IMG/VR virus record: IMGVR_UViG_3300032242_003291
Location: 253,260-317,259 of that record
Direction: 5' to 3' (one strand)
Length of the DNA: 64,000 bases
Shown: positions 1 through 44,144 of the stretch, piece by piece
Numbering within the stretch: position 1 is the first letter of the stretch
Layout: each line of letters starts with the position of its first letter
Program-made: the position numbers and the translations under genes
The notes under the pieces: model-generated
Database searches by the model: none
Seen by the model: only the letters and a program-made list of their open reading frames with translations
What the model was told of the DNA's origin: nothing

Positions 1-483
1 TCAGAACAAGGTCATCCTGATTATGTCGAAGTTAACATGGAAAATGTTAAAAGAATAGTTGACGACAAAGAATCTATGATTGAACTTTTAGATAACCAAC
101 TACACGATTTGAAAAGTGAGTTGTATTCAATCCATAGTAGTGCATATAACGACGCATATGAATCAGAGATTTGGGACGAGATATTTGATGAATTAAAAAT
201 TTATATAATAGGTTCAGGTGAATGGATAACCAAATCACACCCTTATAAAAAAAATACAGAAATTCAATATTTTAAGGTACCTTTGGTAGACTTTGAATCA
301 AATATAAACGATTACTTAATTAATAATAAAGGTTACGGTCAATCGGGGACGTTGGAGTATCACGGTAGTTACATCGATATCATGGCTGAAGATAGAGATT
401 GTTTAAGTATAAGAGTACCTGATTATCCTGATTCAAGGAAAGTTGATAAAAATATTAATTTATACTTCAAAGATTATATTTAA
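1..483 (+). CDS. hypothetical protein, probably 5'-truncated by the window
   Basis: Frame is open from base 1 (SEQGHPDYVEVN precedes the ATG at 37); its stop overlaps the next ATG (TAATG). Confidence 0.7.
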   Translation, partial: SEQGHPDYVEVNMENVKRIVDDKESMIELLDNQLHDLKSELYSIHSSAYNDAYESEIWDEIFDELKIYIIGSGEWITKSHPYKKNTEIQYFKVPLVDFESNINDYLINNKGYGQSGTLEYHGSYIDIMAEDRDCLSIRVPDYPDSRKVDKNINLYFKDYI

Positions 484-1271
484 TGAAAATTGAACAAATG
501 ATACATAAAGTTTTAGAGGAACAAAGAGGTTTTACCCCACACAAAAATCCTCCTAAGAACATCAAGAATATTCTATCTCAGATTGAATTGTTTGAAATGT
601 ATCCAAAGATTTTTGCCCTTGTGATTAAAGATGATAAGTTAAGAGCCAGAGTATTCATGCGTTACCAAGAGTTCTACGAATCGGACTCTGATTCATTCAG
701 AGGTAAAGGATTCAAATGGTATGACTACGTTAAATTCTATAAAGAAAAGACAAAGAAAGATTACTTCTCATATCACGAAGATTGGGCAGGATATAATATT
801 CCATGTACTTCTATTGAGTCATGTATGGCTGTTATCCCCGACCTTAACTTCTATGATTTAATAATGTTCAGTGTTGTTGATACAATCAGAGAACAAGTTG
901 GTAGTGAAAACTTTTATTTAATTGGTATTGACCAATCAACAGGAGAAGACCCATCACTTATATTCCATGAGGTTGCTCACGGATTATGGTTTTCATCCGC
1001 AGTATACAAAGCAAAACAATCTAAGAACATAGAAAGATTAAAACCTTTTGTTAGAGATGCAGTTGCGAAAAAGATTACTGGTATGGGTTATGGTGAAAAC
1101 GTTGTGGATGATGAGATTCAAGCATATTTATCTACAGGTATTGGTGATAACATGACAAGAATAAAAGATATCAAACAAGCCCAAATTCCATTCAAAGAAA
1201 CATTTGATTCTTATGCTGGTAAAATAAAACCAAAAAAGATTCAAATTGATTGGAGTACTGACTTAGACTAA
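483..1271 (+). CDS. HEXXH (zincin-like) putative metallopeptidase
   Basis: HEVAH followed by a downstream DEIQAY Glu; N-terminal MKIEQMIHKVLEEQ tag. Confidence 0.6.
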   Translation: MKIEQMIHKVLEEQRGFTPHKNPPKNIKNILSQIELFEMYPKIFALVIKDDKLRARVFMRYQEFYESDSDSFRGKGFKWYDYVKFYKEKTKKDYFSYHEDWAGYNIPCTSIESCMAVIPDLNFYDLIMFSVVDTIREQVGSENFYLIGIDQSTGEDPSLIFHEVAHGLWFSSAVYKAKQSKNIERLKPFVRDAVAKKITGMGYGENVVDDEIQAYLSTGIGDNMTRIKDIKQAQIPFKETFDSYAGKIKPKKIQIDWSTDLD

Positions 1272-2125
1272 TGATTAAATTTATTAACATATTAGAAAAC
1301 GTTATATCAGAACAAAAGAAATATCAATTTCATCCTGAAGTACTTCAGAAGTTAAAAGATATTACAAATAGACTTTGGAATGATAGAAAAAAGAAATACA
1401 AAGGGAGAACATTAGTCGACTCTTTAATATTTCACGTTGCTGATGGTACTGAAGGTTTAGTTAAGTTTTATGTAAATCCTGATTTACCATACATTGGTTT
1501 CATGGATACTGAACCAAAAAAATCTACAAATCCTAAAGATATATACATTGATGTTAATCCTAAAAACTACGAAAGTAAAAAGAATTTATATCTCACACTA
1601 TATCATGAAATGATTCATGCGTCAGACCCTAATTTGTCAACCAAGATGACTAAAAAATACATGTCAACTTATGATGAGAATAGTGATGAAAAGTATTGGG
1701 GTCATCCAATTGAATTCTTTGCAATAACTAACGAATTTTTGGAAGGCTTGATAAATGAATTCCAACTAAGAGTGTTCAGATTAAGAAATGTTGAAAATAA
1801 AAAAGCACTAATCAAATCATTTAATAACATATTAAATTATTTTTCAAAAGGTGAAAAGTTATCAAGATTATCTTTGAATATTTTGGACAGAATAAATGAT
1901 ACTGGTGTAGTTGAAGATAAATTCAAAAGAGTTTTTTCAGATATTTCAGTTGAAAGTCCAATTTCTTCTGAATTAGTTAAGTCTGAAGATGAAGAACCAT
2001 ATTATTTAACATATATTAATTTAATCAAAAAATACAATCCGAAAATTTGGACAAGGTTTTTAACGATGTTATATAAAGCAAAGGAAGATGTTGAAGATGT
2101 GATAAATAAAAAGGGACTTAAATAA
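1271..2125 (+). CDS. HEXXH (zincin-like) putative metallopeptidase
   Basis: LYHEMIH followed by [10 protein letters not shown]; N-terminal [15 protein letters not shown] tag. Confidence 0.6.
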
Positions 2126-2134
2126 GTCCCTTTT
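2109..2134. terminator. bidirectional intrinsic terminator overlapping two convergent stop codons
   Basis: AAAAGGGACTT-AAAT-AAGTCCCTTTT perfect inverted repeat. Confidence 0.8.
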
Positions 2135-3941
2135 CTTTTGCTATTAATTCCAATTTGTCTAATTTGTTTTGACTAACTTCAAGAATAACCGATTGTTCTT
2201 TTATTGCTTCAATACATAATGCAACAATATCTTGATATTTAACTCTTAAAATTTCAGGTTCTTCACCCATTACTACTTCGGGTAATGCGATTTTAAGCTC
2301 TTGAGCGATAAACCCTATGTCTCTTCTTTCATTATTTCCACCTGCTCCGTTTTTCCAAAAGAAACTAACCCCTCTAATTTTTTTAATTGTATTAATTGAA
2401 TCTTTTATTATTTGGATATCTTTCTTAAACCTTTGGTCTGATGGACCTGGAGGACCCGTTGGTCCTGTTGGTCCTGGCGCTCCTGTATCACCTGGTGCGC
2501 CTCCAGGTCCTGTCGGTCCTGTAGGTCCTTGAGGACCTTGTGGACCTGTATATCCTGTTGGTCCTCTACCTCCTTGTGGACCTGTTGGTCCTTGTGGTCC
2601 TGTTGGTCCTGTTGGACCTGGTGCACCACCACCACCTTGGCTTCCTTGAGCTCCTGTAGCACCTCCACCTCCTTGAGCACCCTGAGCACCTCCAGGTCCT
2701 GTTGGTCCTGTTGCACCTTGTGGTCCTCTTGGTCCCTGTGGCCCCGTTGCCCCTTGGGCTCCTTGACCTCCTGTTCCTCCTTGGGCTCCCTGAGCTCCTT
2801 GAGCTCCACCAGCTCCTTGAGCTCCCTGAGCTCCTACGGGTGATGGTCCTGGTATTCCTGTTGCACCTTGAGCACCTTGAGCTCCTGTAGCACCTCCACC
2901 TCCTTGTGCACCTTGTGCACCTTGGCTTCCTCCAGGACCTTGTGCACCTTGGTTTCCTCCAGGACCTTGAGCTCCTTGCGCACCTTGTCCTCCTGTAGCA
3001 CCTTGGGCTCCTGTTGAACCTCCGCCTCCTTGTGCACCTTGCGCACCCTGTCCTCCTGTTGCTCCTTGAGCCCCTTGTGGTCCTTGGACTAAAATTCCTG
3101 TTGGTCCTTGAGCACCTGTAGCACCTTGTGGACCTGTAGCTCCTTGAGCACCTGTGATTCCCTGAGCTCCTTGAAACCCTTGTGCTCCTTGACCTCCTTG
3201 AGCACCTACTGAACCTAAACTTCCTTGAGCACCTTGTCCTCCTGTAGTTCCTTGAGCACCTTGTGGTCCAGCATTTCCTTGAGCACCTTGAAATCCTTGG
3301 GCTCCGATTGCACCTTGTGAACCTGTTGCTCCCTGTCCTCCCTGAGCCCCTTGGGCACCTTGTCCTCCTGTTGAACCCGCACCCCCCTGTGCACCTTGTC
3401 CTCCTTGAGCACCTTGAGCTCCTTGTCCTCCTGTCGGTCCTTGAGCACCTTGTGCTCCTGAAGCACCTTGAGCACCCTGAGCGCCTTGTCCTCCCTGAGC
3501 ACCCTGAGCGCCCGTTGCTCCTCCTCCTCCTTGAGCACCCTGAGCACCTTGTCCTCCTTGAGCACCCTGAGTTGTACTGTTAGCTCCTTGTGCTCCCGCA
3601 GTTCCTTGGGCTCCTTGCGCACCTTGGATTCCCTGAGCTCCTTGAGCTCCTTGAGCACCTTGAGCCCCTGTTGGTCCTGATGGTCCTGCTGGTTGAGCAC
3701 TTCCTTTCCAACCTGTACTATCTATTAAAGTTCCAAATGAATTAATTAAAGATGTACCTAATCTTAAGTCAGCATTCGAAACTGCTATTGTTGGTTGAGT
3801 CGAATTAAATGCTATATAGGTTGTTGCACCTCTTTTGAATTTAATTGAACCAGATTCAATGACCATTGTTGTTACTGTACTCGCAGTATCACTAAAATCA
3901 ATTTTGCCCGACCCTGGGGTTATAATTATATCTTCAGCCAC
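2118..3941 (-). CDS. collagen-like fibre with C-terminal intramolecular chaperone (peptidase S74)
   Basis: About 415 aa of Gly-X-Y (GAQ/GPT/GAT), then SDQRFKKDI...GFIAQE...Y and a terminal coiled coil. Confidence 0.9.
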
Positions 3942-5820
3942 CTATTAACTCTTTTAGTTTGTTTATTCTTTGATAGATAGAATCAATTATTTTTTGTTGT
4001 TCTTGTATTGAACCAATACCCAAACTAACCATCGCACCATATTCTACGGATTTGTATCCGTCTTCATCAGTAAATACTAATTCGGGAACTATATTTTCAA
4101 CTTGTTGAGCAATAACACCAATAGCATTACCTTGAAAGGCTTCAGGTACTTCAATATTTTTGTCATTTATAATTTTCGGATGATTATAATCCCAAACGAA
4201 ACTAACTCCTTCTATTTGTTTTGTTTTGCCGTAAACATCAGACAAAGGTTTAATATTATCTTTTAATCTTCTATCTGATGGAGGGCCTTGTGGTCCTTGA
4301 GGTCCTGTTGGTCCTTGAGCACCTTGGGCACCTTGTCCTCCCATACCACCCTGTGGTCCTGTAGGTCCTACGTTTCCTTGAGGTCCTGTGTATCCGTATG
4401 GTCCTTGTGGTCCTGTGGCACCTTGTGGTCCTGTGGCACCTTGAGGTCCTGTTGGTCCTCCAACACCTTGAGCACCTGTTGCTCCTCCACCACCCTGAGA
4501 ACCTTGCGCACCTGTTGCTCCTCCACCACCTGTCGCTCCTTGAGCTCCTTGGAATCCTTGAGCACCTCCTGGTCCTCCTGGCCCTTGAGCACCTTGTGGA
4601 CCACCTGGTCCTGTGGCACCCGTCGCACCTGCAGTTCCACTTGCTGCCCCTTGAGCTCCTTGAGCTCCTTGACCTCCAGTTCCACCTTGAGGTCCCGTAG
4701 GTCCTTGAGCACCTGTTGCTCCTCCTCCACCTGCGGTTCCTTGAGCTCCTTGAGCTCCAGTTGTGGCACTTGCAGCACCTTGAGCACCTGTTGGTCCCTG
4801 AGAACCTTGAGCACCTTGAGCACCTGTTGTTCCACCCTGAGCACCTTGAGCACCAGTACCTCCTTGAGCGCCTTGGGCACCTTGAGCACCTGTTGTTCCA
4901 CCTTGTGCTCCTTGAGCTCCTGTGGCACCTTGAGGACCTAATCCTCCTTGAGCCCCTGTGGCACCTTGAGCACCTGTTGAACCTTGAGCACCTTGAGCAC
5001 CTGTTGAACCTTGAGCACCTTGTACACCACCTTGAGCTCCTTGAGCTCCTTGAGCACCTTGTGGACCTTGTGGGCCTTGAGCACCTTGAGTAAGTCCTTG
5101 AGCTCCTTGAGCACCTGTAGCTCCTTGAAAACCCTGAGCTCCTTGAGCTCCTGTTACCACACTTGCACTTCCTTGAGCTCCTTGGGCTCCTGTATTCCCT
5201 GTGGCTCCCTGAGCTCCAGTTGTCACACCTTGAGCCCCTTGTGCTCCCTGAGCTCCCGTATTTCCTGTAGCTCCTTGAGCCCCTGTATTAGCACCTTGTG
5301 CACCTTGAGCACCTGTTGAGCCTTGAGCCCCTGTATTACCTTGAGCCCCTGTGTTGGCACCTTGTGCACCTTGGGCACCTGTCGAACCTTGAGCACCTGT
5401 TGCCCCTTGAGCACCTGTCGCCCCTTGAGCACCTGTTGTACCTATAGTACCTTGAGCCCCTGCTGAACCTTGAGCCCCTGTAGGACCTGTGTTACCTGGA
5501 GCTCCTGTTGCTCCTTGAGCACCTTGACCACCTTGTGCACCTGCGGAGCCTTGAGCACCTGCTATACCTGATGTGGGTCCAACCCAAACTCCTGTATTAT
5601 CAATCATCTTAAGACCACCAACATATAAATTACCTGTTACTGAAGTTCCACTTGAAACCATAGTATCTGTAATTGTTGATGAACTTGTGTTAGTTGAAGA
5701 TGAAAAAACAATTTGACCATTTTGTACATCTATTGCCATCAAATTTGTTCCGTCATTAAACAACGCGTAAGGGTCAGTAATAGTTCCTTTACCTTGTGGA
5801 TATATAATTACATTAGCCAT
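3934..5820 (-). CDS. collagen-like fibre with C-terminal intramolecular chaperone (peptidase S74)
   Basis: About 425 aa of Gly-X-Y, then SDRRLKDNI...GVIAQQVE...VEY. Confidence 0.9.
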
Positions 5821-8800
5821 TAATTCAATTTATTTTCTAAGTCTTTTAATTGTTCTTCGATGTCTTCAATAAATACTTGTTGTTCTTTTATACCTTCAAC
5901 TAAAACCGCATTTAATTTAGCATACTCAACTTTATAATATCCATCTTCCGTAGTTTGTATTACTTCAGGGTAATATTCTCTAACGTTTTGTGCAATTAAT
6001 CCAATTGAGTGTAATCTATCTTGTTTTTGATAATAAACGTATTGACTTGGATTTAATTTTTCGTTCCAATCAAATTCAACAACATCAAACTTCAATATAG
6101 ATTTCAATGTATCAGGAATTGTTTCAATTCCTTGTTTTAATCTTCTATCTGAACAAAATCCCTGTGCAGACCAATAACTTCGATTATCTAAGTAACCGTA
6201 AACACCACAGATTTTAACGTAATTATTTTCAATTCCTGTACCCGAGTTATTAAATGTTTGACATGCATAGTACGTAGGATATAAAAGTCCATATCCTCTT
6301 GATGAAATATTACATGCATAGTCATTTCCAAAAACTAAACCACCATTACCATAATAACAAGCATAGCTTATAGAAGGTCCCCATTCGATACTAAGACTAT
6401 AACAAGTTTGATATGCTGATGGACCTGTCGGACCTGCTGGACCTGATGGGCCTTGAGCTCCTTGCGCTCCTTGATAACCAGTAGGTCCTGTATATCCGTA
6501 TGGTCCTGGAGGGCCGTAGGGTCCTGTTGGTCCTTGTGGCCCTGTTGGTCCTGTTGGTCCTGTACCACCTTGAGGTCCTTGTGGTCCAGTACCTCCCTGT
6601 GCCCCTGTTGCACCTCCACCACCTTGTGACCCTTGTGCACCTGTCGCACCTTGTGGGCCTGTTGGACCTGTCGGTCCCGTGGCTCCTTGTGCTCCTGTGG
6701 CACCACCTCCTCCTGTGCTACCTTGAGCTCCTTGAGCTCCTGTTGGACCTCCTGGACCTGTTGGACCTGTGGGTCCACGAGAACCTTGACCTCCTGGTGC
6801 TCCTGTTGAACCTTGTGGTCCCGCCGCGCCTCCACCTCCTTGAGCTCCTTGAGCTCCTTGTCCTCCTTGTGCTCCTGTATTACCTGTGGCTCCTTGTGGA
6901 CCTCTTGTTCCTGTAGCACCTGGTGAACCTTGAGCTCCTGTGGCACCTCCCGCTCCTTGTGGACCAACATTACCCGTATTTCCTTGTGCACCTTGGTTCC
7001 CTGTACCACCCGTAGCACCTGTTGGACCTCTAAAACCTACAGCTCCTTGTGCCCCTGTTGGTCCTACTGGACCTTGAGCACCTTGTGGTCCTGTGGCTCC
7101 TTGTGCCCCTGTATTACCTTGAGCCCCTTGTGGACCTTGAGCACCTTGTGGGCCTGAAGCTCCTTGTGCACCTGTAGGTCCTTGTGCCCCTGTACTACCT
7201 TGAGCCCCTTGTGGTCCTACAAAACCTGTATTACCTTGTGCACCTATATTACCTTGAGCTCCTTGTCCACCTGTTGGTCCACGTGAACCTTGTGCTCCTT
7301 GTCCTCCTTGAGCTCCTGTATCCCCTCCCGTTCCTGTTGGACCTACAGCACCTGTGGCACCTCCCAAACCTTGTGAACCATTTGCTCCCGTCGCACCTTG
7401 TGGTCCTGGTGCACCTGTTTTTTTTATGATTAAGTTGTAGTTATTACCAATAGTTAGAGAACCAACAAAAGAATCATTAGTAAGTATAGCATAAAATGTA
7501 CCAAAATCAGTTACACTTGTAATTAAAGTATTTATCCAACCATTAGTACCATCAGTATATGTAAGTGAATCACCAACATAAGGTAAAGCTAATGTATTTC
7601 CATTAAAATCAGTTTTGTTTACATTTGCTCTTTTTGCTAATGATTTATATAATTGTCCTGCGTCATTCGAAAAAGCATATTGATACGGGTTTGTATTACC
7701 TGCATAACCTTGAGCCCCTTGACCTCCTTGCGACCCTGTATTACCTGTGCTACCTTGGGAGCCTGTTGCACCTTGAGCACCTGTATTACCTTGAGCACCT
7801 GTATTACCTTGAGCCCCTTGTCCTCCTTGTGCTCCTGTTGTACCAACAGCTCCTTGAGCTCCTGTTGTACCTTGTGTACCTTGCGGTCCTTTATATCCAA
7901 CACATTTACCTACACAACTTGTATATGCATATCCTGTTGGACAAGTGTATCCTGATGAAATATATATTCCATTTACGTTTTGAACAACTTCTGCACTTGT
8001 TTTACCACTTGATGATGAAATAATATTCAATTGGGAAACACTTGTAGCTGCCGTTAATTGGGCTAATGTATTATCATAAACTTCATATCCAAAACCTTGG
8101 ATTGAACCTTCGTTCAGTCCATAAAGTTCTAAAGTATGATTTCCCCCAGACAAAGTAATTGGATAGACGTTCCAATATTTGAATGTATTAGGACTTCCTG
8201 AAGTTGAAGGGGTATATGTATTTACAACATCTGTTGAATCTAATCTAAGTCTGTATTCGTTGTCCGCACCAACACCAATATAGTAGGTTTTACCAGCAGT
8301 TATTCCTGACAAACATGTAGAATAACCATACCAATAATAATCTTGTACTGTTGAACCTGATTTACCAGACCTATTTAATGGTCCGTCAAGTCCACTTGGT
8401 TGAGTTCTTCTCCAAACACCAGCATTTAATGACGTTGCTTGAACAGTACCAGAACCATCAGTGGCATATCCTGAAGCGAAAAATCTTGTTCCAAAATCAC
8501 TATATTCAATAGCGGCCGTATTTGTTAATGAAACCGTAAAGGCTGGTGGTGTTGGGTCTATAATGTTACCTGTGTATCCTTGTGCACCTGCAGCACCTTG
8601 TGCACCTGAAATATTTGTGGTTGGTCCAACCCAACTTGATGTTGCGTTTATGACTTGAGTTCCGTTAACTCCAAAGTAACCTGTGACATTTAATGAACTA
8701 CCAATTGATATAATTGCGTTACTTGGCTGAATTGATAATACACTACTTTGTGTGGTCGAACTAAATTGTACTGTCGCACCTGATAAAACTTGTAAAGTAA

Positions 8801-8891
8801 GAGTTCCTGTATTAGTAAAATTGATGTAAGGTATACGTGTTGCCAACCTTGATACCGCATTACTCGGATAGATTATTATATTTTTAGCCAT
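5820..8891 (-). CDS. collagen-like fibre with inserted globular (PA14-like) domain, Cys/Tyr-rich tip and S74 chaperone
   Basis: Three Gly-X-Y segments, two globular inserts, then SDRRLKQGI...GLIAQNV. Confidence 0.85.
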
Positions 8892-8919: not shown

Positions 8920-9008
8920 CAACGAAATTTATTATTAGTGGAATATTTCATTCCTTTTTATTTTTAATTTTACTATAATTTAGCCTACAATAAACACATA
9001 TTAATATT

Positions 9009-9746
9009 ATGACAATAAAGAAACCTTGTAGTAGAATTTTTTTAGTGAACTTATTTGCAGACTTTATATTATCAAAAATCCCTATTACTGAAAACTCAAT
9101 TATAAATGTAGTAGACTGCAAAAACTTTTTTGTTGTGAAAGGAAAAACTTCATCAAAAGATTTATTAAATTTATCTGAAATTATCACAGAATTTTCGAGT
9201 AAGTTTTCAAATTATATTATAGAAAATAAAATTACACATACAATTGATTTAATCGAATACGACCAAGAATTAAATCCATACAAAAATTCAACTTTTACAT
9301 ATTACAATAGTGACAATTGTTCTTACCATTACGAACAAATCAGTGCGTACAAACAAAAAGAATCATCATATGAGTATATTCATTTTCTAAATGAAATTAA
9401 TGATGAGGAATTTATTACACAATCAGAATTCCCACATGGGTACTCATTGGGACAAGGGAGATTATTATATTACTATGGTAAACATATAATGTATAATATT
9501 CCTTCAAATTATCCCGTTACTTATTTAACTTTCAATTTATCAACTGAAAAGAATGAGGATGGTGAACAATTATTTTCTATCGATAAAAATGAGGAATTAA
9601 CTTCTGCAGTATTAGATGTTTTTGATTTTGATATGAGTTGGTTAGAAACAGAAATGAAAAAAGTGGATTGGTCTGTTGAACTTACCAACCCACTTCAGGA
9701 TTATGATTTCTTAAAAAGAATTATTGACGGATTTATTATTATATAA
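9009..9746 (+). CDS. degenerate S-adenosylmethionine synthetase-like protein (catalytic motifs lost)
   Basis: NLFADFILSKI...FFVVKGKTSS..LNLSEII resembles the MetK N-domain; HGYSLGQGRLLYYYGKHIMYNI and LTSAVLDVFDF resemble the MetK C-domain. Confidence 0.55.
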   Translation: MTIKKPCSRIFLVNLFADFILSKIPITENSIINVVDCKNFFVVKGKTSSKDLLNLSEIITEFSSKFSNYIIENKITHTIDLIEYDQELNPYKNSTFTYYNSDNCSYHYEQISAYKQKESSYEYIHFLNEINDEEFITQSEFPHGYSLGQGRLLYYYGKHIMYNIPSNYPVTYLTFNLSTEKNEDGEQLFSIDKNEELTSAVLDVFDFDMSWLETEMKKVDWSVELTNPLQDYDFLKRIIDGFIII

Positions 9747-10038
9747 TTCCAACCTTTTTTCTATGATTATTAATGATATCAACAGCTTCGGTTAATTCCA
9801 TATAATCTCTATCAGGAGCATACAAGAATGATTCATAGGTTTCACCCTCACCTTCAATCACTAATAAAGCAGGTATCATATCATTTTCAGTTATTTTAGA
9901 ATACGTATCATATTCTTTTTCATGTTCGTGAATATCTCTATCAAAAAACTCAATTCCTTCTTTAACTAGCATTTCTTTGAATTGGTCACAAAAAGGACAC
10001 CCTTTCATAGTATAGACAATAACGTTTAAGTCTTTCAT
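9739..10038 (-). CDS. glutaredoxin-like protein
   Basis: VYTMKGCPFC and a cis-Pro loop (MIPAL). Confidence 0.85.
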   Translation of the reverse strand: MKDLNVIVYTMKGCPFCDQFKEMLVKEGIEFFDRDIHEHEKEYDTYSKITENDMIPALLVIEGEGETYESFLYAPDRDYMELTEAVDIINNHRKKVGII

Positions 10039-10039
10039 A

Positions 10040-10363
10040 TTAATCTAATAAGTTTAGCACTTCTCCTGGAGTCATCACACCTGGTCTTGAAAAAACCTCT
10101 TTACCCTCTTTGAAGATTTTTATAGTTGGTACACTTCTAATACCTAATTCATTGACAACGAATTCTTTATCAGTATCGATATCGTATTTGTAGATATTGT
10201 ATTTTGGAGCACTTGTTGATTCTTTAATTAAAGTTTCATTAACCTTTGATAGGTTGTTTAACATTATTTTACAAGGTCCGCACCATGTCGCAAATAAATC
10301 TAATACAAAATCTTCCCCATTTTGCATTTTTTCTTTAAGTTGGTCTGTTGTTAGTTGTTGCAT
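10040..10363 (-). CDS. trxA: thioredoxin
   Basis: FATWCGPCK and GIRSVPT. Confidence 0.9.
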   Translation of the reverse strand: MQQLTTDQLKEKMQNGEDFVLDLFATWCGPCKIMLNNLSKVNETLIKESTSAPKYNIYKYDIDTDKEFVVNELGIRSVPTIKIFKEGKEVFSRPGVMTPGEVLNLLD

Positions 10364-10688
10364 TTTTATATTGTTTTAATAATTGTGATAAGAACATGTA
10401 CAATTCTGTGTACTGTTTTACGTTATAATAAATAGTTAAATTTGAAATTATGTCTGAATGTGGAACTACTCTGAATTTAACGAATAAATAAAAGTTTTGT
10501 TGGCTTTCAAAAATTACTTCTTCAAATTTTATAATACCACTTTCATTCATTGATGACTTTTCATAAACTCTCGTTAACTTTTTTTCGTTTAGATATTTCA
10601 AAAAATCCCCTTTTAATTCAGGTGCAACCATTACCGAGAAGATTCCTTCATTTGATTCTATGTTTTTTATATATTCTGGTTTATCCAT
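10335..10688 (-). CDS. hypothetical protein
   Basis: 117-aa ORF coupled to both neighbours. Confidence 0.7.
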   Translation of the reverse strand: MDKPEYIKNIESNEGIFSVMVAPELKGDFLKYLNEKKLTRVYEKSSMNESGIIKFEEVIFESQQNFYLFVKFRVVPHSDIISNLTIYYNVKQYTELYMFLSQLLKQYKNATTNNRPT

Positions 10689-12322
10689 TATAAAAAAATA
10701 TTATTGAAAAATAATGATTGATTACTATCAATAGTTTTATGTGTCCATCTAAGATTTCCTTGTTCATCCCAATATGAATCCGACTTAAGGGTCGTACCAT
10801 TATTACACTCTTTGGTTAACTTTACAGTATCAAATCTTTTGTCTCTTACACAAGATAATACTTGTTGGTCTAATTTCAATAGAACCGAAGTCCACACATC
10901 ATCTAATTTTTGATTAAACTTACCTAAACTTTGAACTCTATTAGCACTTACCAATGCTCCACTCATGTTCATCCTGTATTCAATAGTTGCCCTTTCATCA
11001 CCTTTTTGTACAGAGATAATCAAAGAACCAGGTTTACCAATATAACCTTTAACACAATTAGATTGGAAATTACTCTCATCATTATAGTTTTTACTACTAT
11101 CTAACAATGTTGGGTGGTAGACTTCGAATATTGGTTTAGAAATTTTTTCATACATATATTCGGGATAGTGTCTACTATAAGTTCCCATCTTATAATGTTG
11201 TAATTTGTCACTCCAATCCAAATGTTCTTTTCTAAAATCTTCTTTACTCTCAACTGATTGCCACCTCAAATCACGTTCACCAAACATTTTCAATTCTGTA
11301 TACATTCTGATATGGTCATGAAATGTATATGAATCTAAATTTTGATGAATGAAAACTTGTTTGAAAAGAATATATACTCTCCTCAATTCTTCTTTTGAAA
11401 TGAGTTCAGAAAACAATCGAGGGTAATTAATTGAACCTAAAAGTGAGTTAGGTGAGTTTAATATATCTACAATAATATTTTCTTCGTCTTGGTTTAACCA
11501 ATCATCTCCAAAAAGTTTTCTCGCCGCTTGATATAATTCAATATTTAATTTATCACATGTATGTAATGCATGTTTAACTTTTTTTCCTGATAACTGATGT
11601 TTAATCATAATGGCATCAACTAATTTGTTACCATTCTTTTTCAGGATTTTTTTAATCTCAGGACCTACTAATTGACTCGGAAATATTTTGAAATTATTTG
11701 GGTACTTGTAATTTCTCTTATCAAGATAAAATCTGAATAGTCTATCCCCAAAATTTAGTGTTTCGAAATTTTGTCTTTGGTCTATTTGAAACATAAATTC
11801 AGAAAACGCAATTGATACTTCATCATAAGAATTTTCAGTAAATCTTGTAAGAATGTTTTTAATTTTAGACTTGAGTGATTCAATAGGTTCTAAATAAAAA
11901 GCATTTCTCTTAACCGCCTTTACACATTTTTTCTTCCTTTGATATCCACGGATATGACCGCTATACACATCACCAGTTTTAGTATTAACTGAAATATAAT
12001 CTACATTCTTTTCAACTTTGAACCATAGCTTACCTTCCCCTCTATGCCTAAATCCTGTAAATAATTTAATTACAACCTTGTCTTCATTTTTTTCGACAAC
12101 AATCATCACGTATTCTTTTGAAATGGAACACAATGGATTGAATAGATTTTCAGTATAACACTCTTCGCCCTCAACATTACCATTATTTATAAACAACGGA
12201 TGTTTTTCTGTCACATAAAAAATATTGTCATCATTATTTAATGGAAATATTTTTGTTTGGTCTTTATACTTGACTGTATTGTATCTCTCAAAATTTTTCT
12301 TGTAGATTTCCTCTTTCATCAC
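10688..12322 (-). CDS. PcfJ-like domain protein
   Basis: C-terminal ESNFQSNCVKGY...ERATIEY...VQSLGKFN matches the PcfJ pattern. Confidence 0.7.
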   Translation of the reverse strand: MMKEEIYKKNFERYNTVKYKDQTKIFPLNNDDNIFYVTEKHPLFINNGNVEGEECYTENLFNPLCSISKEYVMIVVEKNEDKVVIKLFTGFRHRGEGKLWFKVEKNVDYISVNTKTGDVYSGHIRGYQRKKKCVKAVKRNAFYLEPIESLKSKIKNILTRFTENSYDEVSIAFSEFMFQIDQRQNFETLNFGDRLFRFYLDKRNYKYPNNFKIFPSQLVGPEIKKILKKNGNKLVDAIMIKHQLSGKKVKHALHTCDKLNIELYQAARKLFGDDWLNQDEENIIVDILNSPNSLLGSINYPRLFSELISKEELRRVYILFKQVFIHQNLDSYTFHDHIRMYTELKMFGERDLRWQSVESKEDFRKEHLDWSDKLQHYKMGTYSRHYPEYMYEKISKPIFEVYHPTLLDSSKNYNDESNFQSNCVKGYIGKPGSLIISVQKGDERATIEYRMNMSGALVSANRVQSLGKFNQKLDDVWTSVLLKLDQQVLSCVRDKRFDTVKLTKECNNGTTLKSDSYWDEQGNLRWTHKTIDSNQSLFFNNIFL

Positions 12323-12324
12323 TG

Positions 12325-12355
12325 CAAATATAAGAAAATAAAAAAGGAGAACAAA
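12325..12355 (-). promoter_or_regulatory. Bacteroidota sigmaA-type promoter
   Basis: TTTG-N19-TATATTTG immediately upstream of the start codon. Confidence 0.75.
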
Positions 12356-12365
12356 CGTTCTCCTT
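12338..12365 (-). terminator. intrinsic terminator
   Basis: AAGGAGAAC-AAAC-GTTCTCCTT with a minus-strand U-tract, just after the stop at 12369. Confidence 0.7.
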
Positions 12366-12368
12366 ATA

Positions 12369-12650
12369 TTAATTTAGACAAATTAGTCCGTATTTTGTTG
12401 TTATGAATATGTCTTTGATTTTCTTATCCAAGACAGGGTCTTTACCATTAATCTTAACACAAATCTCCATTAATTGAGTTTGAGTTAAACTAGCTTCTTC
12501 TCCTTTATCAAAGTTTTTTGAAGCTTGTTCACGAATTTTGACATAAAATTCTTCTTCTTTATCTTTAGGTACCAAATTTAATAAATCATTTGGGTTCTCC
12601 CTGAAGAATTTTAAGATGTTATTCATGTATATGTCAACATCAACACTCAT
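12369..12650 (-). CDS. hypothetical protein
   Basis: 93-aa ORF in the operon. Confidence 0.75.
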   Translation of the reverse strand: MSVDVDIYMNNILKFFRENPNDLLNLVPKDKEEEFYVKIREQASKNFDKGEEASLTQTQLMEICVKINGKDPVLDKKIKDIFITTKYGLICLN

Positions 12651-12667
12651 AGATTAAATTTTTGAGA

Positions 12668-13981
12668 TTACTCTTGAAGGTCCCACATTCCTCCACCCAT
12701 ATCAGTACCTTTTGCTTTGATTGATTCAGGAACATTAACATTATTACTTCCTTTTAAGTTTAAGAAGTATAAGTTTGGAATGTCCGCAATACATTCAGGA
12801 ATTGATTTCAACTTAGGGTTATTAATTAACGCTAAGAATCTTAACTTAGGTAATGAACAAATTGCATCTGGTACACTTTCAATACAGTTATCCAAAAGAA
12901 TCATATGTAAGTTTTTGAATCTTCCGATTTCCTGTGGAATATTAATAGTGATATCACTCTTGTTATCTCTATTTTGAATTTGGAATTCTTGTAGAGTATC
13001 AGGTAAATTACCAATCAAATCATCTAAACCATAAAGAGCAATGAATTTACCAATTGCACCATGACTGAAACTATCAATTATTAATTTTTCACCACCAACC
13101 GTAAGTCCTTTCGCAAATTCAGGTTTGAATAACTCTTTCAACTCTTTCATTGGACCATTTAAGTATTGAACCAAATCAATCTGATGGTCATGAATATCCA
13201 TGAATTGATTGGATGGGAAATGGAATTGATATCTTTCTTTTGGTAAACCTGATGGGTGAACGTTTGTATCAGTTGGTTTGTAAACCACATATAATGGACC
13301 ATCCTTAATATATCTATCGAACCAATTCAAACCAGGTCCTGAAGTACACCATCTTGTTTCTTGTTGATTACCACCGTAAAAACATGCAGCTTCTTTTCCT
13401 AACGCACCTTTATCTTTGATTTCAACAACTCTCCACTCATCACCATCATATAAAAGTTTTGAGCCAGGATGAACTGTTGCCGTTTTTCTTTCAGTTTTAG
13501 TTGTTGTTGCAAGAGTCAAATCAAAATCTTTAACCGCATCAAATAACTGACGAGGAGTTAATTTGTTAATATCTTTTTCACCTTTAATCTTATTCTTGAA
13601 TCTATCGAATTTTGTAAGGTCCTCAGTTACTTTATATAAATCCTCCATAAAAAGGTCCTTAACTTGCTTAACCTCTTTCTCATATCCATTATCACCAGGT
13701 TGTCTTTCTGTTGTTGGAGTTAAGTAATTTTTAATTAACCATTGAACATACTTACCCACCTTGATTTTCTCAAGTTCTTTTGGGTCTTTACTATCAGGGT
13801 CAACGTTGTTCATTCTTGACGTTGGGTCAGCCTGAACTAATGCCATGAACTCTTGTTTAGTCAGTTTTGGTTTAGTTTTATTCCCTTTTTTATCCTCACT
13901 AGGTTTTGTTAGTGCGTTGTATAAAACCTCAAACCTTGACTGTTCTGATATTATTGATTTAAGTATTGACGTAAATTTCAT
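12668..13981 (-). CDS. YG..TxWCT-domain protein with C-terminal leucine-rich repeats
   Basis: FYGGNQQETRWCTS; LRRs IPQEIGRFKNLHMILLDN, VPDAICSLPKLRFLALINN, IPECIADIPNLYFLNLKGS. Confidence 0.75.
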   Translation of the reverse strand: MKFTSILKSIISEQSRFEVLYNALTKPSEDKKGNKTKPKLTKQEFMALVQADPTSRMNNVDPDSKDPKELEKIKVGKYVQWLIKNYLTPTTERQPGDNGYEKEVKQVKDLFMEDLYKVTEDLTKFDRFKNKIKGEKDINKLTPRQLFDAVKDFDLTLATTTKTERKTATVHPGSKLLYDGDEWRVVEIKDKGALGKEAACFYGGNQQETRWCTSGPGLNWFDRYIKDGPLYVVYKPTDTNVHPSGLPKERYQFHFPSNQFMDIHDHQIDLVQYLNGPMKELKELFKPEFAKGLTVGGEKLIIDSFSHGAIGKFIALYGLDDLIGNLPDTLQEFQIQNRDNKSDITINIPQEIGRFKNLHMILLDNCIESVPDAICSLPKLRFLALINNPKLKSIPECIADIPNLYFLNLKGSNNVNVPESIKAKGTDMGGGMWDLQE

Positions 13982-14024: not shown

Positions 14025-14864
14025 CTAATAATTCAATATCAACAGCTCTTCACCCATATTTTGTTTGGTATTTTTTTTCGCAGAAGCTGCTTTAGCAAAT
14101 TCTTTACGTTCCCAACGGTATAAATCTTCAGGAAACCAATCATGTAATAGCGGAAAATCGTAATATGATAGACTGAATTTACCTTGAATACCTTGAAGGG
14201 TATTTGCAAGTCTTTCGTGGTCTTGTCGGTCAAAATCATGATTAGAATAGTAATTCTCTGTTTTCCAATATGGTGGGTCTAAGTAGATGTATGTTGATTT
14301 TGAATCATATTTGTTTATTACATCCCCAAAATCCATATTCTCAACATCTGTAATCTTCAAAAAATGGTCAATCCAGTTAGGTTTACTTAACTTATCCCTG
14401 AAAGAAAGGTATTTGGACCTATATTTCCCCTTCAAATCTATAAATGAAGATGTCTCAGGCTTACTACCTGAAAACACCTGTGTGAGGACATAAGCGTACT
14501 TAGCAGCCACTTCATAATCAGGATAATTGATTGTAAATCCAGAGCTGAATAATTCTTGTTGGAATGTATTAAATCTTTCTTTGTGTTCGGGCGGAGTAAC
14601 ATCAACTCCGATTTGTTGTACGGATATTGAATCTAACGCTCTTTGCAGTTCAGATGGATTCTGAACACACTTAAATAGATTATAATTTAATGGGTTAAAG
14701 TCATTATAAACAACTTTCTTAAGATTTGGGTACTGACTCAAATTCATATTAAAGAAACACCAAAACATCCCTCCGAATGTTTCAACATATGTTTCCATGT
14801 CCTGTGGGTAATATGGAACTATCCATTTACCAATTTTTGATTTTCCACCGATATAACTTAGCAT
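14025..14864 (-). CDS. Dam-family (D12 class) N6-adenine DNA methyltransferase
   Basis: YIGGKS, YVETFGG, VVYND and YLDPPY motifs. Confidence 0.9.
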   Translation of the reverse strand: MLSYIGGKSKIGKWIVPYYPQDMETYVETFGGMFWCFFNMNLSQYPNLKKVVYNDFNPLNYNLFKCVQNPSELQRALDSISVQQIGVDVTPPEHKERFNTFQQELFSSGFTINYPDYEVAAKYAYVLTQVFSGSKPETSSFIDLKGKYRSKYLSFRDKLSKPNWIDHFLKITDVENMDFGDVINKYDSKSTYIYLDPPYWKTENYYSNHDFDRQDHERLANTLQGIQGKFSLSYYDFPLLHDWFPEDLYRWERKEFAKAASAKKNTKQNMGEELLILNY

Positions 14865-14935: not shown

Positions 14936-15085
14936 ATGTCAGAAGAAAAAGAATGTAAAAAGTGTAAACAAAAAAATACGTCACCTAAACAACTATTGAT
15001 GGCAATTGGAGGTTTTTATTTATTGTTTTCATCAATCTATGGAACCATCCAAATCGTTCACAACATCATCAACTTATTTAGATAG
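14936..15085 (+). CDS. small CxxC membrane protein (not in the ORF track)
   Basis: MSEEKECKKCKQKNTSPKQLLMAIGGFYLLFSSIYGTIQIVHNIINLFR*, 49 aa; fills the gap and is preceded by TATTTATA at 14913-14920. Confidence 0.6.
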   Translation: MSEEKECKKCKQKNTSPKQLLMAIGGFYLLFSSIYGTIQIVHNIINLFR

Positions 15086-15995
15086 GTCTTTCAAACCTTA
15101 CATTAAGTTTTACATACATATCCCCACCATCAAAACCTTTTCCTCTTAGTCTTAGAGGTCTACCTGTGTCAAATATTTTTGGTGCGTCCATGTTCAGGTC
15201 ACCATCTGGATGTGGAATTAAAAATTTATCTTTTTGTATTTCTTCTAAGTTCAATGTTAGTTTATAGATTAAATCGTTATTCATTTTTTCAAACCCATCT
15301 TTTTCTATAAGTTCAATCTGAACAACTAAGTCTCCATAGTCCCCATTCCTATAATCTCCAAGATTCTGTAATTTCAAGAACTGACCACTATCAACTCCAA
15401 CAGGAATATTGATTCTGACTTCATTTGAATTTGGTTTACTTCCTCTACCATCACAATAATAACATTTGTGTATCAAAGTATAACCTCTACCACCGCAAGT
15501 CTGACAAGAAGTTCTTATCTGTTGAACCATAAATCCAGTACCAAAGGTTTTAACTTGAGCTCCGCTACCACCACAAGTTGAACACAATTGCTGGTCACCA
15601 CCTGACCCATTACATATATTACAATTAATATCCCTTACATAATATAAAGTTTTTTCAACACCTTTATAAGATTCTATTGGTGTTATCTGAAGTTTAATTA
15701 TTTTATCTGGTGCGGATTTTCTATGTCTTGGTTGTGCATGTGCCTGTTGGTGCATAGCATTGAATATGTCTTGGAATGGTGTTCCTGCATATGGATTGCT
15801 TTTGGATTGATTATATTGAGCTTTCTTGGTCTTATCACTTAATATATCATAAGCTTCTGCAATCTCCTTAAATTTTTCAGCGCCTTCAGGATTAACATCG
15901 GGATGATATTTCTTAGATAGGTTCCTATAACTTTTTTTTATGTCGTCATCGGACGCATTCTCTTCAACTTCTAAAATTTTGTAGTAATCTTTCAT
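15078..15995 (-). CDS. dnaJ: DnaJ chaperone (class A)
   Basis: MKDYYKIL J-domain with HPD, four CxxCxGxG repeats and a C-terminal domain; the ATG at 15995 is the likely start. Confidence 0.95.
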   Translation of the reverse strand: MKDYYKILEVEENASDDDIKKSYRNLSKKYHPDVNPEGAEKFKEIAEAYDILSDKTKKAQYNQSKSNPYAGTPFQDIFNAMHQQAHAQPRHRKSAPDKIIKLQITPIESYKGVEKTLYYVRDINCNICNGSGGDQQLCSTCGGSGAQVKTFGTGFMVQQIRTSCQTCGGRGYTLIHKCYYCDGRGSKPNSNEVRINIPVGVDSGQFLKLQNLGDYRNGDYGDLVVQIELIEKDGFEKMNNDLIYKLTLNLEEIQKDKFLIPHPDGDLNMDAPKIFDTGRPLRLRGKGFDGGDMYVKLNVRFERPI

Positions 15996-15997
15996 AT

Positions 15998-16636
15998 ATG
16001 GCAAACTACTTAGTAGTCTTATTCAAGGATAAAAAGAGAAAAAGAATAATAAAGAAGTTCATCACACATAAAAAGGCAAAACTTTTTTATGACGGGTTGA
16101 TAAAAAATTCTAATGAGGTAATCTTCAATACCGAAGTTGAAAATGGCAAGCCGTGCAAATATGAACTTGGTATCGTTGAAATGAGTTCAAAACAACTTAT
16201 CCCTGTTTATATGACAGACGAGTTTGGTCGTTCTATTAAAGTAAAGTTGGAAGAAGATGGTATGACTTTATTCCAAATTGCACCTTACAAAAAAGAAGAA
16301 ACAATCTACGACGTTGAAAAGAAAAAGAAAATAACCATCCAACAATTTATTTCAAAATATCTAAAAGGGACGGGTATGAAAATGGTGTCATCATTGAATA
16401 ATAAAATCATTGTACAAGAAGACGAGAAGGTATCGTTGTTCACAACAAAATCTGAATCTGAATCTCAACGATTTATTGATTGTATATCAAATTATTTCTT
16501 TAAAACCAAAAGAGGTGATTGTTTGTTTGTAAAAGATAACTCTATACCGCAAAAAAAATACCTTTATGAATTGTTAGAATCAAAAGGTATTTCTAAAAAA
16601 ATATTATATCGAAAATTTACATCTCTTCCTCAGTAG
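15998..16636 (+). CDS. hypothetical basic protein
   Basis: 212-aa ORF with typical codon usage, divergent from dnaJ. Confidence 0.75.
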   Translation: MANYLVVLFKDKKRKRIIKKFITHKKAKLFYDGLIKNSNEVIFNTEVENGKPCKYELGIVEMSSKQLIPVYMTDEFGRSIKVKLEEDGMTLFQIAPYKKEETIYDVEKKKKITIQQFISKYLKGTGMKMVSSLNNKIIVQEDEKVSLFTTKSESESQRFIDCISNYFFKTKRGDCLFVKDNSIPQKKYLYELLESKGISKKILYRKFTSLPQ

Positions 16637-40215: not shown

Positions 40216-40249
40216 CTTATATAAATATTTTTGTTTTTACTTTATGGTA

Positions 40250-43204: not shown

Positions 43205-43271
43205 TTATGATGTTATTATATCCTATAAGTATAGGTTTTAATGATATTTTGTATAGGTTTATCATATCTAA

Positions 43272-43916: not shown

Positions 43917-44131
43917 TGAACTACTGTTACTCCTGAAATTATACAATTATTATTATCAATCACTTTCAACATATAAGATGGTGAAGTGTTGTATGGCGAT
44001 GGTATGTCAAATATGTATGGAGTTGAACTTATTGTTGTAATATAAAAACAAGCCGAGCCATTGGGTTGACAAACAAACACATCGTATGGTGATTGTCCTG
44101 TTATACTATCTATTGTTACTTGAATTGCCAT
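43913..44131 (-). CDS. small beta-rich protein, paralog of the N-domain of the downstream gene
   Basis: QVTIDSITGQSPYDVFVC...KVIDNNNCI versus QVTITSVTANTPVNIYYC...KIVDTQGCI. Confidence 0.75.
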   Translation of the reverse strand: MAIQVTIDSITGQSPYDVFVCQPNGSACFYITTISSTPYIFDIPSPYNTSPSYMLKVIDNNNCIISGVTVVQ

Positions 44132-44144
44132 TATCTTAAATATT

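What the first reader, a model, noticed from the sequence alone, without database searches (positions are those of the whole stretch)
9009..9746. MetK (SAM synthetase) pseudoenzyme
Seen by eye: VNLFADFILSKI~CDQISDAILDAI; FFVVKGKTSS..LNLSEII~LVLVAGEITT..VDIPKIV; HGYSLGQGRLLYYYGKHIMYNI~HGGGAFSGKD..DRSAAYAARYVAKNI; LTSAVLDVFDF~LTLLVREFFDL. The catalytic GHPDK, GAGDQG and GKD motifs are missing, and the protein is 245 aa versus about 390. Known: MetK active sites form between subunits, and T3 SAMase inhibits MetK to blunt SAM-dependent defences (type I R-M, BREX). Inference: a dominant-negative or regulatory MetK mimic. It could instead boost SAM supply for the many phage MTases.
Basis: partly seen in the sequence, partly recalled or inferred. 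Interest (0 to 1): 0.72.

Follow-up and report, generated by a model that had tools for sequence, protein, structure and literature searches.

The report
Shrunken, inactive MetK-fold phage protein
A 245-residue protein of a freshwater jumbo phage has the three-lobed fold of the enzyme that makes S-adenosylmethionine but has lost every catalytic motif; hundreds of related phages keep it under strong selection, so it has some other, still unknown, job.

Summary
ORF 9009..9746 (+) encodes 245 aa with no direct Pfam, PHROG, NCBIfam or PDB-sequence hit. Its AlphaFold model (pLDDT 95) matches only methionine adenosyltransferases (MetK/MAT): VIA Z 14.7/14.1/10.5 then 5.0, all top Foldseek hits, ESM-Atlas TM 0.74. 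An independently folded subfamily at about 30% identity gives the same result (Z 16.4). None of 217 family members keeps any MAT catalytic signature, whereas 79 of 79 real MetKs keep them all. The family has its own invariant loop, S-x-F-P-x-G-Y-S...G-R. The gene is single-copy, under purifying selection (dN/dS about 0.1), and a syntenic core gene of a freshwater T4-like jumbo-phage lineage (193 clusters at 50% identity). So it is a MAT-fold protein that cannot make SAM by the MAT mechanism. Its actual role is unresolved. The proposed MetK-poisoning mechanism got no computational answer, and the phage's three own SAM-dependent DNA methyltransferases and the loss of the MetK interface motifs argue against it. 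I favour a non-catalytic binding module that re-uses the old active-site face.

The parts
9009..9746 (+). CDS of the 245-aa MAT-fold (MetK-like), catalytically degenerate protein. It is single-copy in the 317-kb phage genome.
   Evidence: ORF and translation; AF2 model and fold searches; single copy; dN/dS 0.09-0.14.
9033..9257 (+). Residues 9-83: helix, beta-hairpin, helix, strand, equivalent to the first part of the MetK central domain (MetK about 16-100). It carries the family-conserved N14, D36, N39-F40, G45 (invariant), T47, D80, I82 and, just downstream, Y84. The MetK GHPDK motif would lie at residues about 5-9, where the family consensus is x-x-x-S-R.
   Evidence: DSSP of the model; hhalign and HMMER registers; column composition; P0181 residues 18-71 hit TIGR01034 positions 23-77.
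9285..9422 (+). Residues 93-138: strongly reduced counterpart of the MetK N-terminal domain (about 105 aa in MetK, about 45 here). The GAGDQG loop is absent.
   Evidence: hhalign gaps; DSSP; motif census 0 of 217. Domain boundaries are inferred and not read from a residue-level superposition.
9423..9461 (+). Residues 139-151, the family signature loop S-E-F-P-H-G-Y-S-L-G-Q-G-R (S139, F141, P142 invariant, G144, S146, G150, R151). It sits where MetK has RF(VIGG)P ...[about 24 aa including GDxGLTGRK deleted]... HGGG [AFSGKDP deleted] ..DR, which is the remnant of the former active-site and phosphate loops.
   Evidence: Conservation (signature in 202 of 217 members, 0 of 79 MetKs); profile alignments (low confidence on the N-terminal side of H143, higher from residue 148 on).
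9459..9737 (+). Residues 151-243: counterpart of the MetK C-terminal domain (MetK about 272-378), the best-conserved stretch at sequence level. It includes the helix S199-x-x-L-D203-x-F-D-F, which matches MetK L-V-R-E-F-F-D-L.
   Evidence: BLASTP local hit; hhalign; PF02773 hits in 5 members; own MetK-HMM hits in a consistent register.
8974..8994 (+). Putative own promoter and leader: a TATAAT box (8974-8979) and CAATAAA (8988-8994), 15-35 nt before the ATG. There is no Shine-Dalgarno sequence.
   Evidence: Sequence. A -10-like box followed by CAATAAA recurs upstream of homologs, and L090 and L091 have a terminator hairpin just upstream. This is a consensus-level inference only; the scan showed no enrichment of sigma-70-like sites.
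9739..10363 (-). Context: glutaredoxin (9739-10038) and thioredoxin (10040-10363), convergent with the MetK-like gene and overlapping it by 8 nt. This arrangement is kept in every relative examined, down to about 30% identity.
   Evidence: Pfam; synteny.

Best explanation
The ORF encodes a miniaturised, very diverged homolog of methionine adenosyltransferase (MetK/MAT). It keeps all three lobes of the MAT fold in 245 aa, but every sequence element that MetK uses to hold the triphosphate, Mg2+/K+ and methionine is deleted or replaced, so it cannot make SAM by the MAT mechanism. It is an independently transcribed, single-copy core gene of a lineage of freshwater T4-like jumbo phages and is under strong purifying selection, so it has a function. 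Shown here: fold, homology, loss of motifs, selection, synteny. Inferred: it most likely works as a non-catalytic binding module that re-uses the former active-site face. The family's own near-invariant loop (S-x-F-P-x-G-Y-S...G-R) sits there. By profile alignment, that loop fuses the MetK strand carrying the adenine-stacking Phe with the start of the HGGG phosphate loop. A cluster of conserved polar residues (N14, D36, T47, D80, Y84) lies in the equivalent of the central domain. The probable ligand is an adenine-nucleoside-type metabolite (SAM, SAH or a related compound) or a partner protein, bound by a MetK-style face-to-face dimer. My probabilities: MAT-fold homolog that is MAT-dead but functional, about 0.9; binding module at the old active-site face, about 0.35.
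For: Fold: model pLDDT 95.1. Only MATs match, with Z 14.7/14.1/10.5 against the next hit at 5.0, Foldseek 50 of 50 and 30 of 30, and Atlas TM 0.74 with 237 residues aligned. A second model, built from an alignment that excludes the window's subfamily, gives Z 16.4/16.2/10.7. Homology: recurrent metK and S-AdoMet_synt_C hits; collinear hhalign over 229-255 columns with E 0.012 and 0.0017, against reversed-profile controls of 0.12 and 0.074; a MetK HMM hits family members in two consistent registers. Loss of catalysis: 0 of 217 members against 79 of 79 MetKs for five signatures. Function retained: dN/dS 0.09-0.14, like the neighbouring Grx and Trx genes; 677 clusters at 90% identity and 193 at 50%, all 220-280 aa; conserved synteny. 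Conservation is concentrated in the 139-151 loop.
Against: No ligand, oligomeric state or partner has been tested, and I had no model coordinates, so the placement of conserved residues on the old active-site face rests on low-confidence profile alignment and on the known MetK architecture. Conserved Asp, Ser, Tyr and Arg residues could equally form a new catalytic site. No expression data were available (no RNA run was listed). The conserved neighbours (Grx, Trx and unknown proteins) give no functional hint and lie on the opposite strand.
Confidence: 0.5

Rival explanations
1. The protein mimics a MetK subunit and co-assembles with host MetK into dead heterodimers, because MetK active sites are built from both subunits. 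This lowers SAM and blunts SAM-dependent defences (type I/III R-M, BREX), giving the same outcome as T3 SAMase.
For: The MAT fold is retained across the whole protein. The catalytic residues that a partner subunit would need are missing. There is precedent that phages target MetK (PMC8406200; 10.1101/2023.02.27.530186).
Against: The phage encodes three SAM-dependent DNA methyltransferases of its own, within 35 kb of the gene. Identity to MetK is 7-12%, and the loops that line the MetK interface and active site are deleted. The family itself diverges to about 25-30% identity, although MetK is highly conserved. From general knowledge, MetK is a tight obligate oligomer, so only newly made subunits could be captured. 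The complex job gave no answer (not counted as evidence).
Confidence: 0.12
2. Neo-functionalised enzyme. The remodelled cleft (D36, D80, S139, S146, R151, Y84, Y155/156, D203, D206) catalyses a different reaction, for example on a nucleoside, a nucleotide or a SAM-derived substrate.
For: There are many near-invariant polar residues, and selection is as strong as on the neighbouring enzymes.
Against: There is no recognisable catalytic constellation and no co-conserved pathway partner. The phosphate- and metal-binding loops of the ancestor are lost.
Confidence: 0.15
3. Scaffold or structural role unrelated to SAM, for example an assembly factor or a partner of another phage protein, with the MAT fold used only as a stable dimeric platform.
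For: It is a core gene of one phage lineage with fixed synteny. It shows no metabolic context.
Against: Conservation is focused on one loop at the ancestral ligand site, not spread over a surface. There is no virion or assembly gene in the conserved neighbourhood; the adjacent fibre genes in the window are an insertion that is absent from L002-L008.
Confidence: 0.13
4. Positive regulator of SAM supply, like a prozyme or MAT2B. It would bind host MetK or the phage methyltransferases to raise or channel SAM for phage DNA methylation.
For: The phage depends on SAM (three methyltransferases). Dead paralogs that activate their enzyme are known (AdoMetDC prozyme, PMC6221367).
Against: In MetK both active sites need residues from both subunits (general knowledge), so a heterodimer with this protein should be inactive, not activated. 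There is no evidence of any interaction (one search gave no answer).
Confidence: 0.07
5. It is still a working SAM synthetase with an unorthodox active site, or the fold similarity is convergent and not homologous.
For: Archaeal MATs show that the fold survives near-total sequence divergence (7p82 matches at Z 10.5).
Against: Archaeal MATs are still about 400 aa. Here all five catalytic signatures are absent in 217 of 217 members, and about 140 residues including the phosphate loops are missing. Recurrent, collinear sequence hits to MetK models argue against convergence.
Confidence: 0.03

Closest known systems
Bacterial and eukaryotic methionine adenosyltransferase (MetK/MAT; Pfam PF00438, PF02772, PF02773; TIGR01034)
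   Same: The same three-lobed fold across the whole chain (Z 14-16, 236-262 residues aligned), a collinear domain order, and residual sequence similarity in the first helix plus hairpin and in the C-terminal domain.
   Different: It is 245 aa, not about 384-400, with a strongly reduced N-terminal domain. GHPDK, GAGDQG, GGPxGDxGLTGRK and GGGAFSGKD are all absent. Scores are far below the family cut-offs (19.7 against 309 bits). It has its own signature loop. It is found only in phages.
Archaeal MAT (for example M. jannaschii, PDB 7p82)
   Same: It shares the fold (Z 10.5-10.7) with almost no sequence identity.
   Different: From general knowledge, archaeal MATs are full-length, active enzymes. 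The phage protein is a third shorter and lacks the catalytic loops.
Phage- and prophage-encoded MetK (Streptococcus Javan prophages, 12/111phiA; Staphylococcus phage UPMK_1)
   Same: A MetK-derived gene carried by a phage, and some of these are shortened (a 135-aa truncation is reported for 12/111phiA, PMC8223999). ESM Atlas also shows short MetK-like clusters of 299 aa (viral) and 260 aa (Bacillota).
   Different: Those proteins are 41-65% identical to E. coli MetK over about 95% of its length and are annotated as SAM synthetase. The family here has no detectable BLAST similarity and no catalytic motifs. Recognisable MetK occurs in only 138 of 50,697 phage records, none of them related to this phage.
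T3 SAMase (SAM lyase), which degrades SAM and inhibits MetK
   Different: The fold and the mechanism are unrelated. T3 SAMase cleaves SAM and polymerises with MetK, whereas no activity or MetK binding is shown for this protein.
Regulatory dead paralogs (pseudoenzymes), for example the trypanosome AdoMetDC prozyme
   Same: A catalytically degenerate homolog of a SAM-pathway enzyme that is kept under selection (PMC6221367 for the paradigm).
   Different: The prozyme is a close paralog in the same genome and provably heterodimerises with its enzyme. Here the homolog is viral and extremely diverged, and no partner is known.

Membership tests
MetK/MAT enzyme family (EC 2.5.1.6) | Three-domain MAT fold with pseudo-threefold beta-alpha-beta-beta-alpha-beta repeats | tested here: met
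   VIA Z 14.7 and 16.4 with 236 of 245 and 256 of 270 residues aligned; only MATs score above Z 8; Foldseek and Atlas agree.
MetK/MAT enzyme family (EC 2.5.1.6) | Score above the curated cut-off of the family models (TIGR01034, PF00438, PF02772, PF02773) | tested here: not met
   The window protein has no hit. The best family member scores 19.7 bits against a cut-off of 309.4. The own-genome scan for PF00438 and PF02773 is empty.
MetK/MAT enzyme family (EC 2.5.1.6) | Catalytic signatures GHPDK, GAGDQG, GGPxGDxGLTGRK and GGGAFSGKD-x5-D | tested here: not met
   0 of 217 family members against 79 of 79 MetKs for HPD, GDQG, GP.GD, SGKD and D[RK]S[AG]AY. hhalign places deletions at these loops.
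MetK/MAT enzyme family (EC 2.5.1.6) | Length of about 380-400 aa with a complete N-terminal domain | tested here: not met
   245 aa; family range 220-280 aa.
MetK/MAT enzyme family (EC 2.5.1.6) | Face-to-face dimer or tetramer with inter-subunit active sites | tested here: inconclusive
   The only complex job scored MetK as the partner of two copies and gave no answer. Self-pairing was not reported.
MetK/MAT enzyme family (EC 2.5.1.6) | Synthesis of SAM from ATP and methionine | not testable with these tools
   This needs an enzyme assay.
Pseudoenzyme (catalytically dead homolog that is retained) | Demonstrable homology to an enzyme family | tested here: met
   Fold plus recurrent collinear sequence signal.
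Pseudoenzyme (catalytically dead homolog that is retained) | Loss of the catalytic residues across the family | tested here: met
   Motif census; column composition.
Pseudoenzyme (catalytically dead homolog that is retained) | Maintained by purifying selection and not a decaying gene | tested here: met
   dN/dS 0.09-0.14 in six pairwise comparisons, like Grx and Trx; intact ORFs of constant length in 193 clusters at 50% identity.
Pseudoenzyme (catalytically dead homolog that is retained) | No enzymatic activity of any kind | not testable with these tools
   A new activity cannot be excluded in silico.
Phage inhibitors of host MetK (functional class, T3 SAMase-like) | Physical binding to host MetK | tested here: inconclusive
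   The complex prediction score of 0.08 is below the 0.32 mark. The tool states that this is no evidence either way. The host is also unknown.
Phage inhibitors of host MetK (functional class, T3 SAMase-like) | Lowers cellular SAM and relieves SAM-dependent defence | not testable with these tools
   This needs expression and SAM measurement. Indirectly it is disfavoured by the phage's own three SAM-dependent methyltransferases.

The most novel reading that the evidence does not exclude
A phage-specific, catalytically dead MetK subunit co-assembles with host MetK, or with the phage's own DNA methyltransferases, to reprogramme SAM metabolism during infection. This would be a new class of host-takeover or anti-defence protein and the first non-enzymatic use of the MAT fold, which in the PDB is otherwise seen only in MAT enzymes.
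Probability: 0.12. Interest if true: 0.85.

Novelty: new variant of a known kind. Interest (0 to 1): 0.63.

Why it matters
In the exhaustive PDB comparison, the MAT fold is seen only in SAM synthetases: three MAT clusters score above Z 8 and nothing else does. This is a large, unannotated, phage-only family (about 680 clusters at 90% identity and 193 at 50%, widespread in lake metagenomes). It keeps the fold, has shed the chemistry, and is conserved as tightly as the thioredoxin next to it. SAM sits at the centre of phage-host conflict through restriction-modification, BREX, phage self-methylation and T3 SAMase. A conserved dead MetK in phages that methylate their own DNA is therefore an obvious candidate for unexplored SAM-linked biology: sensing, sequestration, channelling or interference with MetK. 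Even if the role turns out to be unrelated, it would be the first documented repurposing of this fold, and it gives Pfam and PHROGs a new family to define. The hypotheses can be tested directly with a small soluble protein.

Tried and rejected
1. Direct single-sequence annotation of the window protein found nothing: Pfam, PHROGs, NCBIfam, PDB phmmer, PDB profile search, tblastn against 50,697 phage records, and ESM Atlas by features.
2. hhalign in global mode failed, aligning 2 columns. Local mode with low mact worked.
The single protein worked.
4. Complex prediction with two copies of the phage protein plus Flavobacterium johnsoniae MetK as partner scored 0.08 against a mark of 0.32. That is no answer, and I did not use it for or against binding. 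It also did not report self-pairing.
5. The T4-type late promoter idea is rejected. TATAAATA lies 90 nt upstream, but the motif is not enriched in the genome (95 observed against about 90 expected) and is not conserved in relatives.
6. The vestigial active-site string EGHTDK at the N-terminus of P0169 occurs in 1 of 296 sequences and is one helical turn out of register. I treat it as probable coincidence.
7. The co-oriented upstream 334-aa gene gave no functional clue. It has no domain, it is not adjacent in more distant relatives, and in the window it is separated by an 8.5-kb insertion.
8. Expression could not be checked: no RNA run was listed.
9. NCLDV origin is rejected. There is no NCLDV capsid match (that search's controls were also silent), whereas a T4-like portal, a tail sheath and PolB are present.
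10. Host assignment rests only on an indirect hint, the complete lack of Shine-Dalgarno motifs. The nearest database phages are extremely distant.

Full report
**What is there.** The window is the last 64 kb of a 317,259-bp IMG/VR virus record with 32.9% GC and 20 tRNAs, rated 100% complete by CheckV. The genome encodes a T4-type portal (Gp20), a tail sheath, a family-B DNA polymerase, and ClpB and DnaJ chaperones, so it is a jumbo T4-superfamily myovirus. It is very distant from any cultured phage. The DNA runs that hold it are freshwater and lake metagenomes. It is a lone plus-strand gene between minus-strand genes. It ends 8 nt inside the convergent glutaredoxin gene, which is followed by thioredoxin.

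**Is it MetK-like?** Single-sequence methods see nothing. Pfam, PHROGs, NCBIfam, PDB sequences and the phage database are all empty, and BLASTP against E. coli MetK gives 15.8 bits, E=1.3. The protein nevertheless belongs to a large unnamed family. There are 677 clusters at 90% identity and 193 at 50% identity, 127 of them at E<=1e-10. All members are 220-280 aa, and some lie on contigs of up to 330 kb.

- An 83-sequence alignment (A1) gave an AlphaFold2 model with pLDDT 95.1 and pTM 0.91.
- Every structural search returns methionine adenosyltransferase and essentially nothing else. This holds for the Foldseek PDB top 50, the Swiss-Prot top 30 and the AFDB clusters.
- The Foldseek-independent exhaustive VIA-align search gives Z 14.7 (236 of 245 residues aligned over MAT residues 10-394), 14.1 and 10.5 for the three MAT cluster representatives. 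The next hit scores 5.0.
- ESM Atlas gives TM 0.74, with 237 residues aligned at rmsd 4.0 A.
- As a robustness test I folded the roughly 270-aa subfamily, which is about 30% identical, from an alignment that excludes the window's subfamily (A2). That model has pLDDT 94.9 and again matches only MATs, at Z 16.4, 16.2 and 10.7, with the next hit at 6.0.

**Homology or convergence?** The sequence signal is weak but consistent. Among the 83 members scanned one by one, the only families hit more than three times are metK TIGR01034 (5 members, best 8.3e-5) and S-AdoMet_synt_C (5 members, best 4.3e-5). A MetK HMM that I built from 79 gammaproteobacterial MetKs hits family members in just two collinear registers: HMM 14-105 with family 4-94, and HMM 271-351 with the family C-terminal domain. 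hhalign gives collinear alignments of 229 columns (A1, E 0.012) and 255 columns (A2, E 0.0017). Reversed-profile controls give E 0.12 and 0.074, with alignments of only 25-90 columns. I conclude that this is divergent homology.

**Is it catalytically dead as a MAT?** A motif census shows HPD, GDQG, GP.GD, SGKD and D[RK]S[AG]AY in 0 of 217 full-length family proteins and in 79 of 79 MetKs. The profile alignments give the following picture.

- GHPDK falls on a variable x-x-x-S-R stretch.
- The GAGDQG loop is removed.
- The N-terminal domain shrinks from about 105 to about 45 residues.
- The roughly 24 residues that contain GDxGLTGRK are deleted.
- AFSGKDP is deleted from the phosphate loop.

What remains is S-E-F-P-H-G-Y-S-L-x-x-G-R (residues 139-151), which is the most conserved element of the family (P142 invariant; S139, F141, G144 and S146 at 90% or more). 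From my knowledge of the E. coli enzyme, the lost positions include His14, Asp16, Asp238, Arg244, Lys245, Lys265, Lys269 and Asp271, which bind triphosphate, Mg2+ and methionine. F141 aligns with the adenine-stacking Phe230, although that part of the alignment has low confidence. The phage has no genuine MetK and no second copy of this family.

**Is it functional?** Yes. dN/dS against three close relatives is 0.09-0.14. The neighbouring glutaredoxin gives 0.03-0.10 and thioredoxin gives 0.05-0.12. Synteny is kept down to 30% identity: MetK-like (+), convergent with Grx, Trx, a protein of about 110 aa, one of about 550 aa, (DUF932), one of about 95 aa, an LRR protein of about 450 aa, and Dam methyltransferase. 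Relatives show a -10-like box and a conserved CAATAAA before the ATG, and two have a terminator hairpin just upstream. The gene is therefore its own transcription unit. This is an inference from consensus matches.

**How does it work?** This is unresolved. I favour a non-catalytic binding module that re-uses the ancestral active-site face, probably as a MetK-like dimer, binding an adenine-nucleoside-type ligand or a partner protein (about 0.35).

- The phage carries three SAM-dependent adenine methyltransferases of its own, within 35 kb of the gene. It has no C5 methyltransferase and no radical-SAM enzyme.
- The loops that line the MetK interface and active site are gone.
- The family diverges far more than would be expected for a ligand of a highly conserved target.
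- MetK oligomers are tight (general knowledge).

The single complex job, with two copies plus F. johnsoniae MetK, gave no answer. The host is unknown. The complete absence of Shine-Dalgarno motifs (4.8% of genes against a 5.4% background) and an A-rich leader fit a Bacteroidota-type host but prove nothing.

**Comparison with what is known.** Recognisable phage MetKs exist in 138 of 50,697 records, mainly Streptococcus prophages. They are 41-65% identical to E. coli MetK over about 95% of its length and are annotated as SAM synthetase. One shortened prophage MetK has been studied phenotypically (PMC8223999). ESM Atlas shows further short MetK-like clusters that still hit PF00438. BFVD holds only one uncharacterised relative of the present family. 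My literature searches found T3 SAMase-MetK work (PMC8406200; 10.1101/2023.02.27.530186) but nothing on a phage MAT-fold pseudoenzyme. The protein therefore belongs to the MAT-fold superfamily but fails the membership tests for the MetK enzyme family. I rate it a new variant of a known kind.

Noticed in passing
window 61696-63999 (-), continuing at genome positions 1-4076: The minus-strand ORF that runs off the end of the window and contig joins in frame with the minus-strand ORF at the contig start. The result is one 2,128-codon Gly/Ser/Thr-rich repeat (fibre-like) gene. The record is therefore effectively circular and complete, with the assembly broken inside a repeat.
   Followed up: yes
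window 2118-8891 (-): Three tandem collagen-repeat fibre genes of 607, 628 and 1023 aa. The last has a Peptidase_S74 intramolecular-chaperone domain. GC is 46-48% against about 30% around them. Together with two plus-strand genes (483-2125), they form an 8.5-kb block that is absent at this position in relatives L002-L008 but present in the closest relatives L113 and L114.
   Followed up: partly
whole genome (G000): There is no Shine-Dalgarno signal at all: 13 of 270 genes (4.8%) against a 5.4% background. Instead there is an A-rich tract at -14 to -10. This fits a Bacteroidota-like, or possibly cyanobacterial, host.
   Followed up: partly
window 14025-14864 (-), 25584-27929 (-); genome 247111-247839 (-): Three SAM-dependent adenine DNA methyltransferases (D12/Dam class, N6_Mtase, N6_N4_Mtase) lie clustered within about 35 kb around the MetK-like gene. 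The Dam gene is part of the conserved syntenic block.
   Followed up: partly
window 10335-13981 (-): A conserved block of proteins without any family match (117 aa, 544 aa, 93 aa) plus a 437-aa protein with weak LRR hits. The block is kept next to Grx and Trx in all relatives, some of which also insert a DUF932 gene.
   Followed up: no
window 15078-16004 (-); genome 118445-120457 (+): The phage encodes its own full-length DnaJ (J domain, CXXCXGXG and C-terminal domain) and a ClpB-like double-AAA chaperone.
   Followed up: no
window 38017-47465 (-) and 49134-52046 (-): Very large ORFs of 732, 984, 1106 and 970 aa have no Pfam or PHROG match, apart from DUF6625 in the last one.
   Followed up: no
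window 1271-2125 (+): A weak, sub-threshold hit to Peptidase_M91 (an effector-type zinc metalloprotease family): E 7e-4, 20.3 bits against a cut-off of 25.
   Followed up: no
genome 252738-253742 (+) = window 1-483 (3' part): A 334-aa protein of unknown function has 944 homologs, many 73-76% identical. In relatives L002-L008 it sits 65 bp upstream of the MetK-like gene on the same strand. One JGI record calls a homolog 'ASC-1-like (ASCH)', but Pfam gives no such hit here.
   Followed up: partly
ESM Atlas clusters (no coordinates): Other short MetK-like protein clusters exist: 299 aa in Uroviricota (69% of members hit PF00438) and 260 aa mainly in Bacillota (98% hit PF00438). They may be evolutionary intermediates or parallel truncations.
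   Followed up: no
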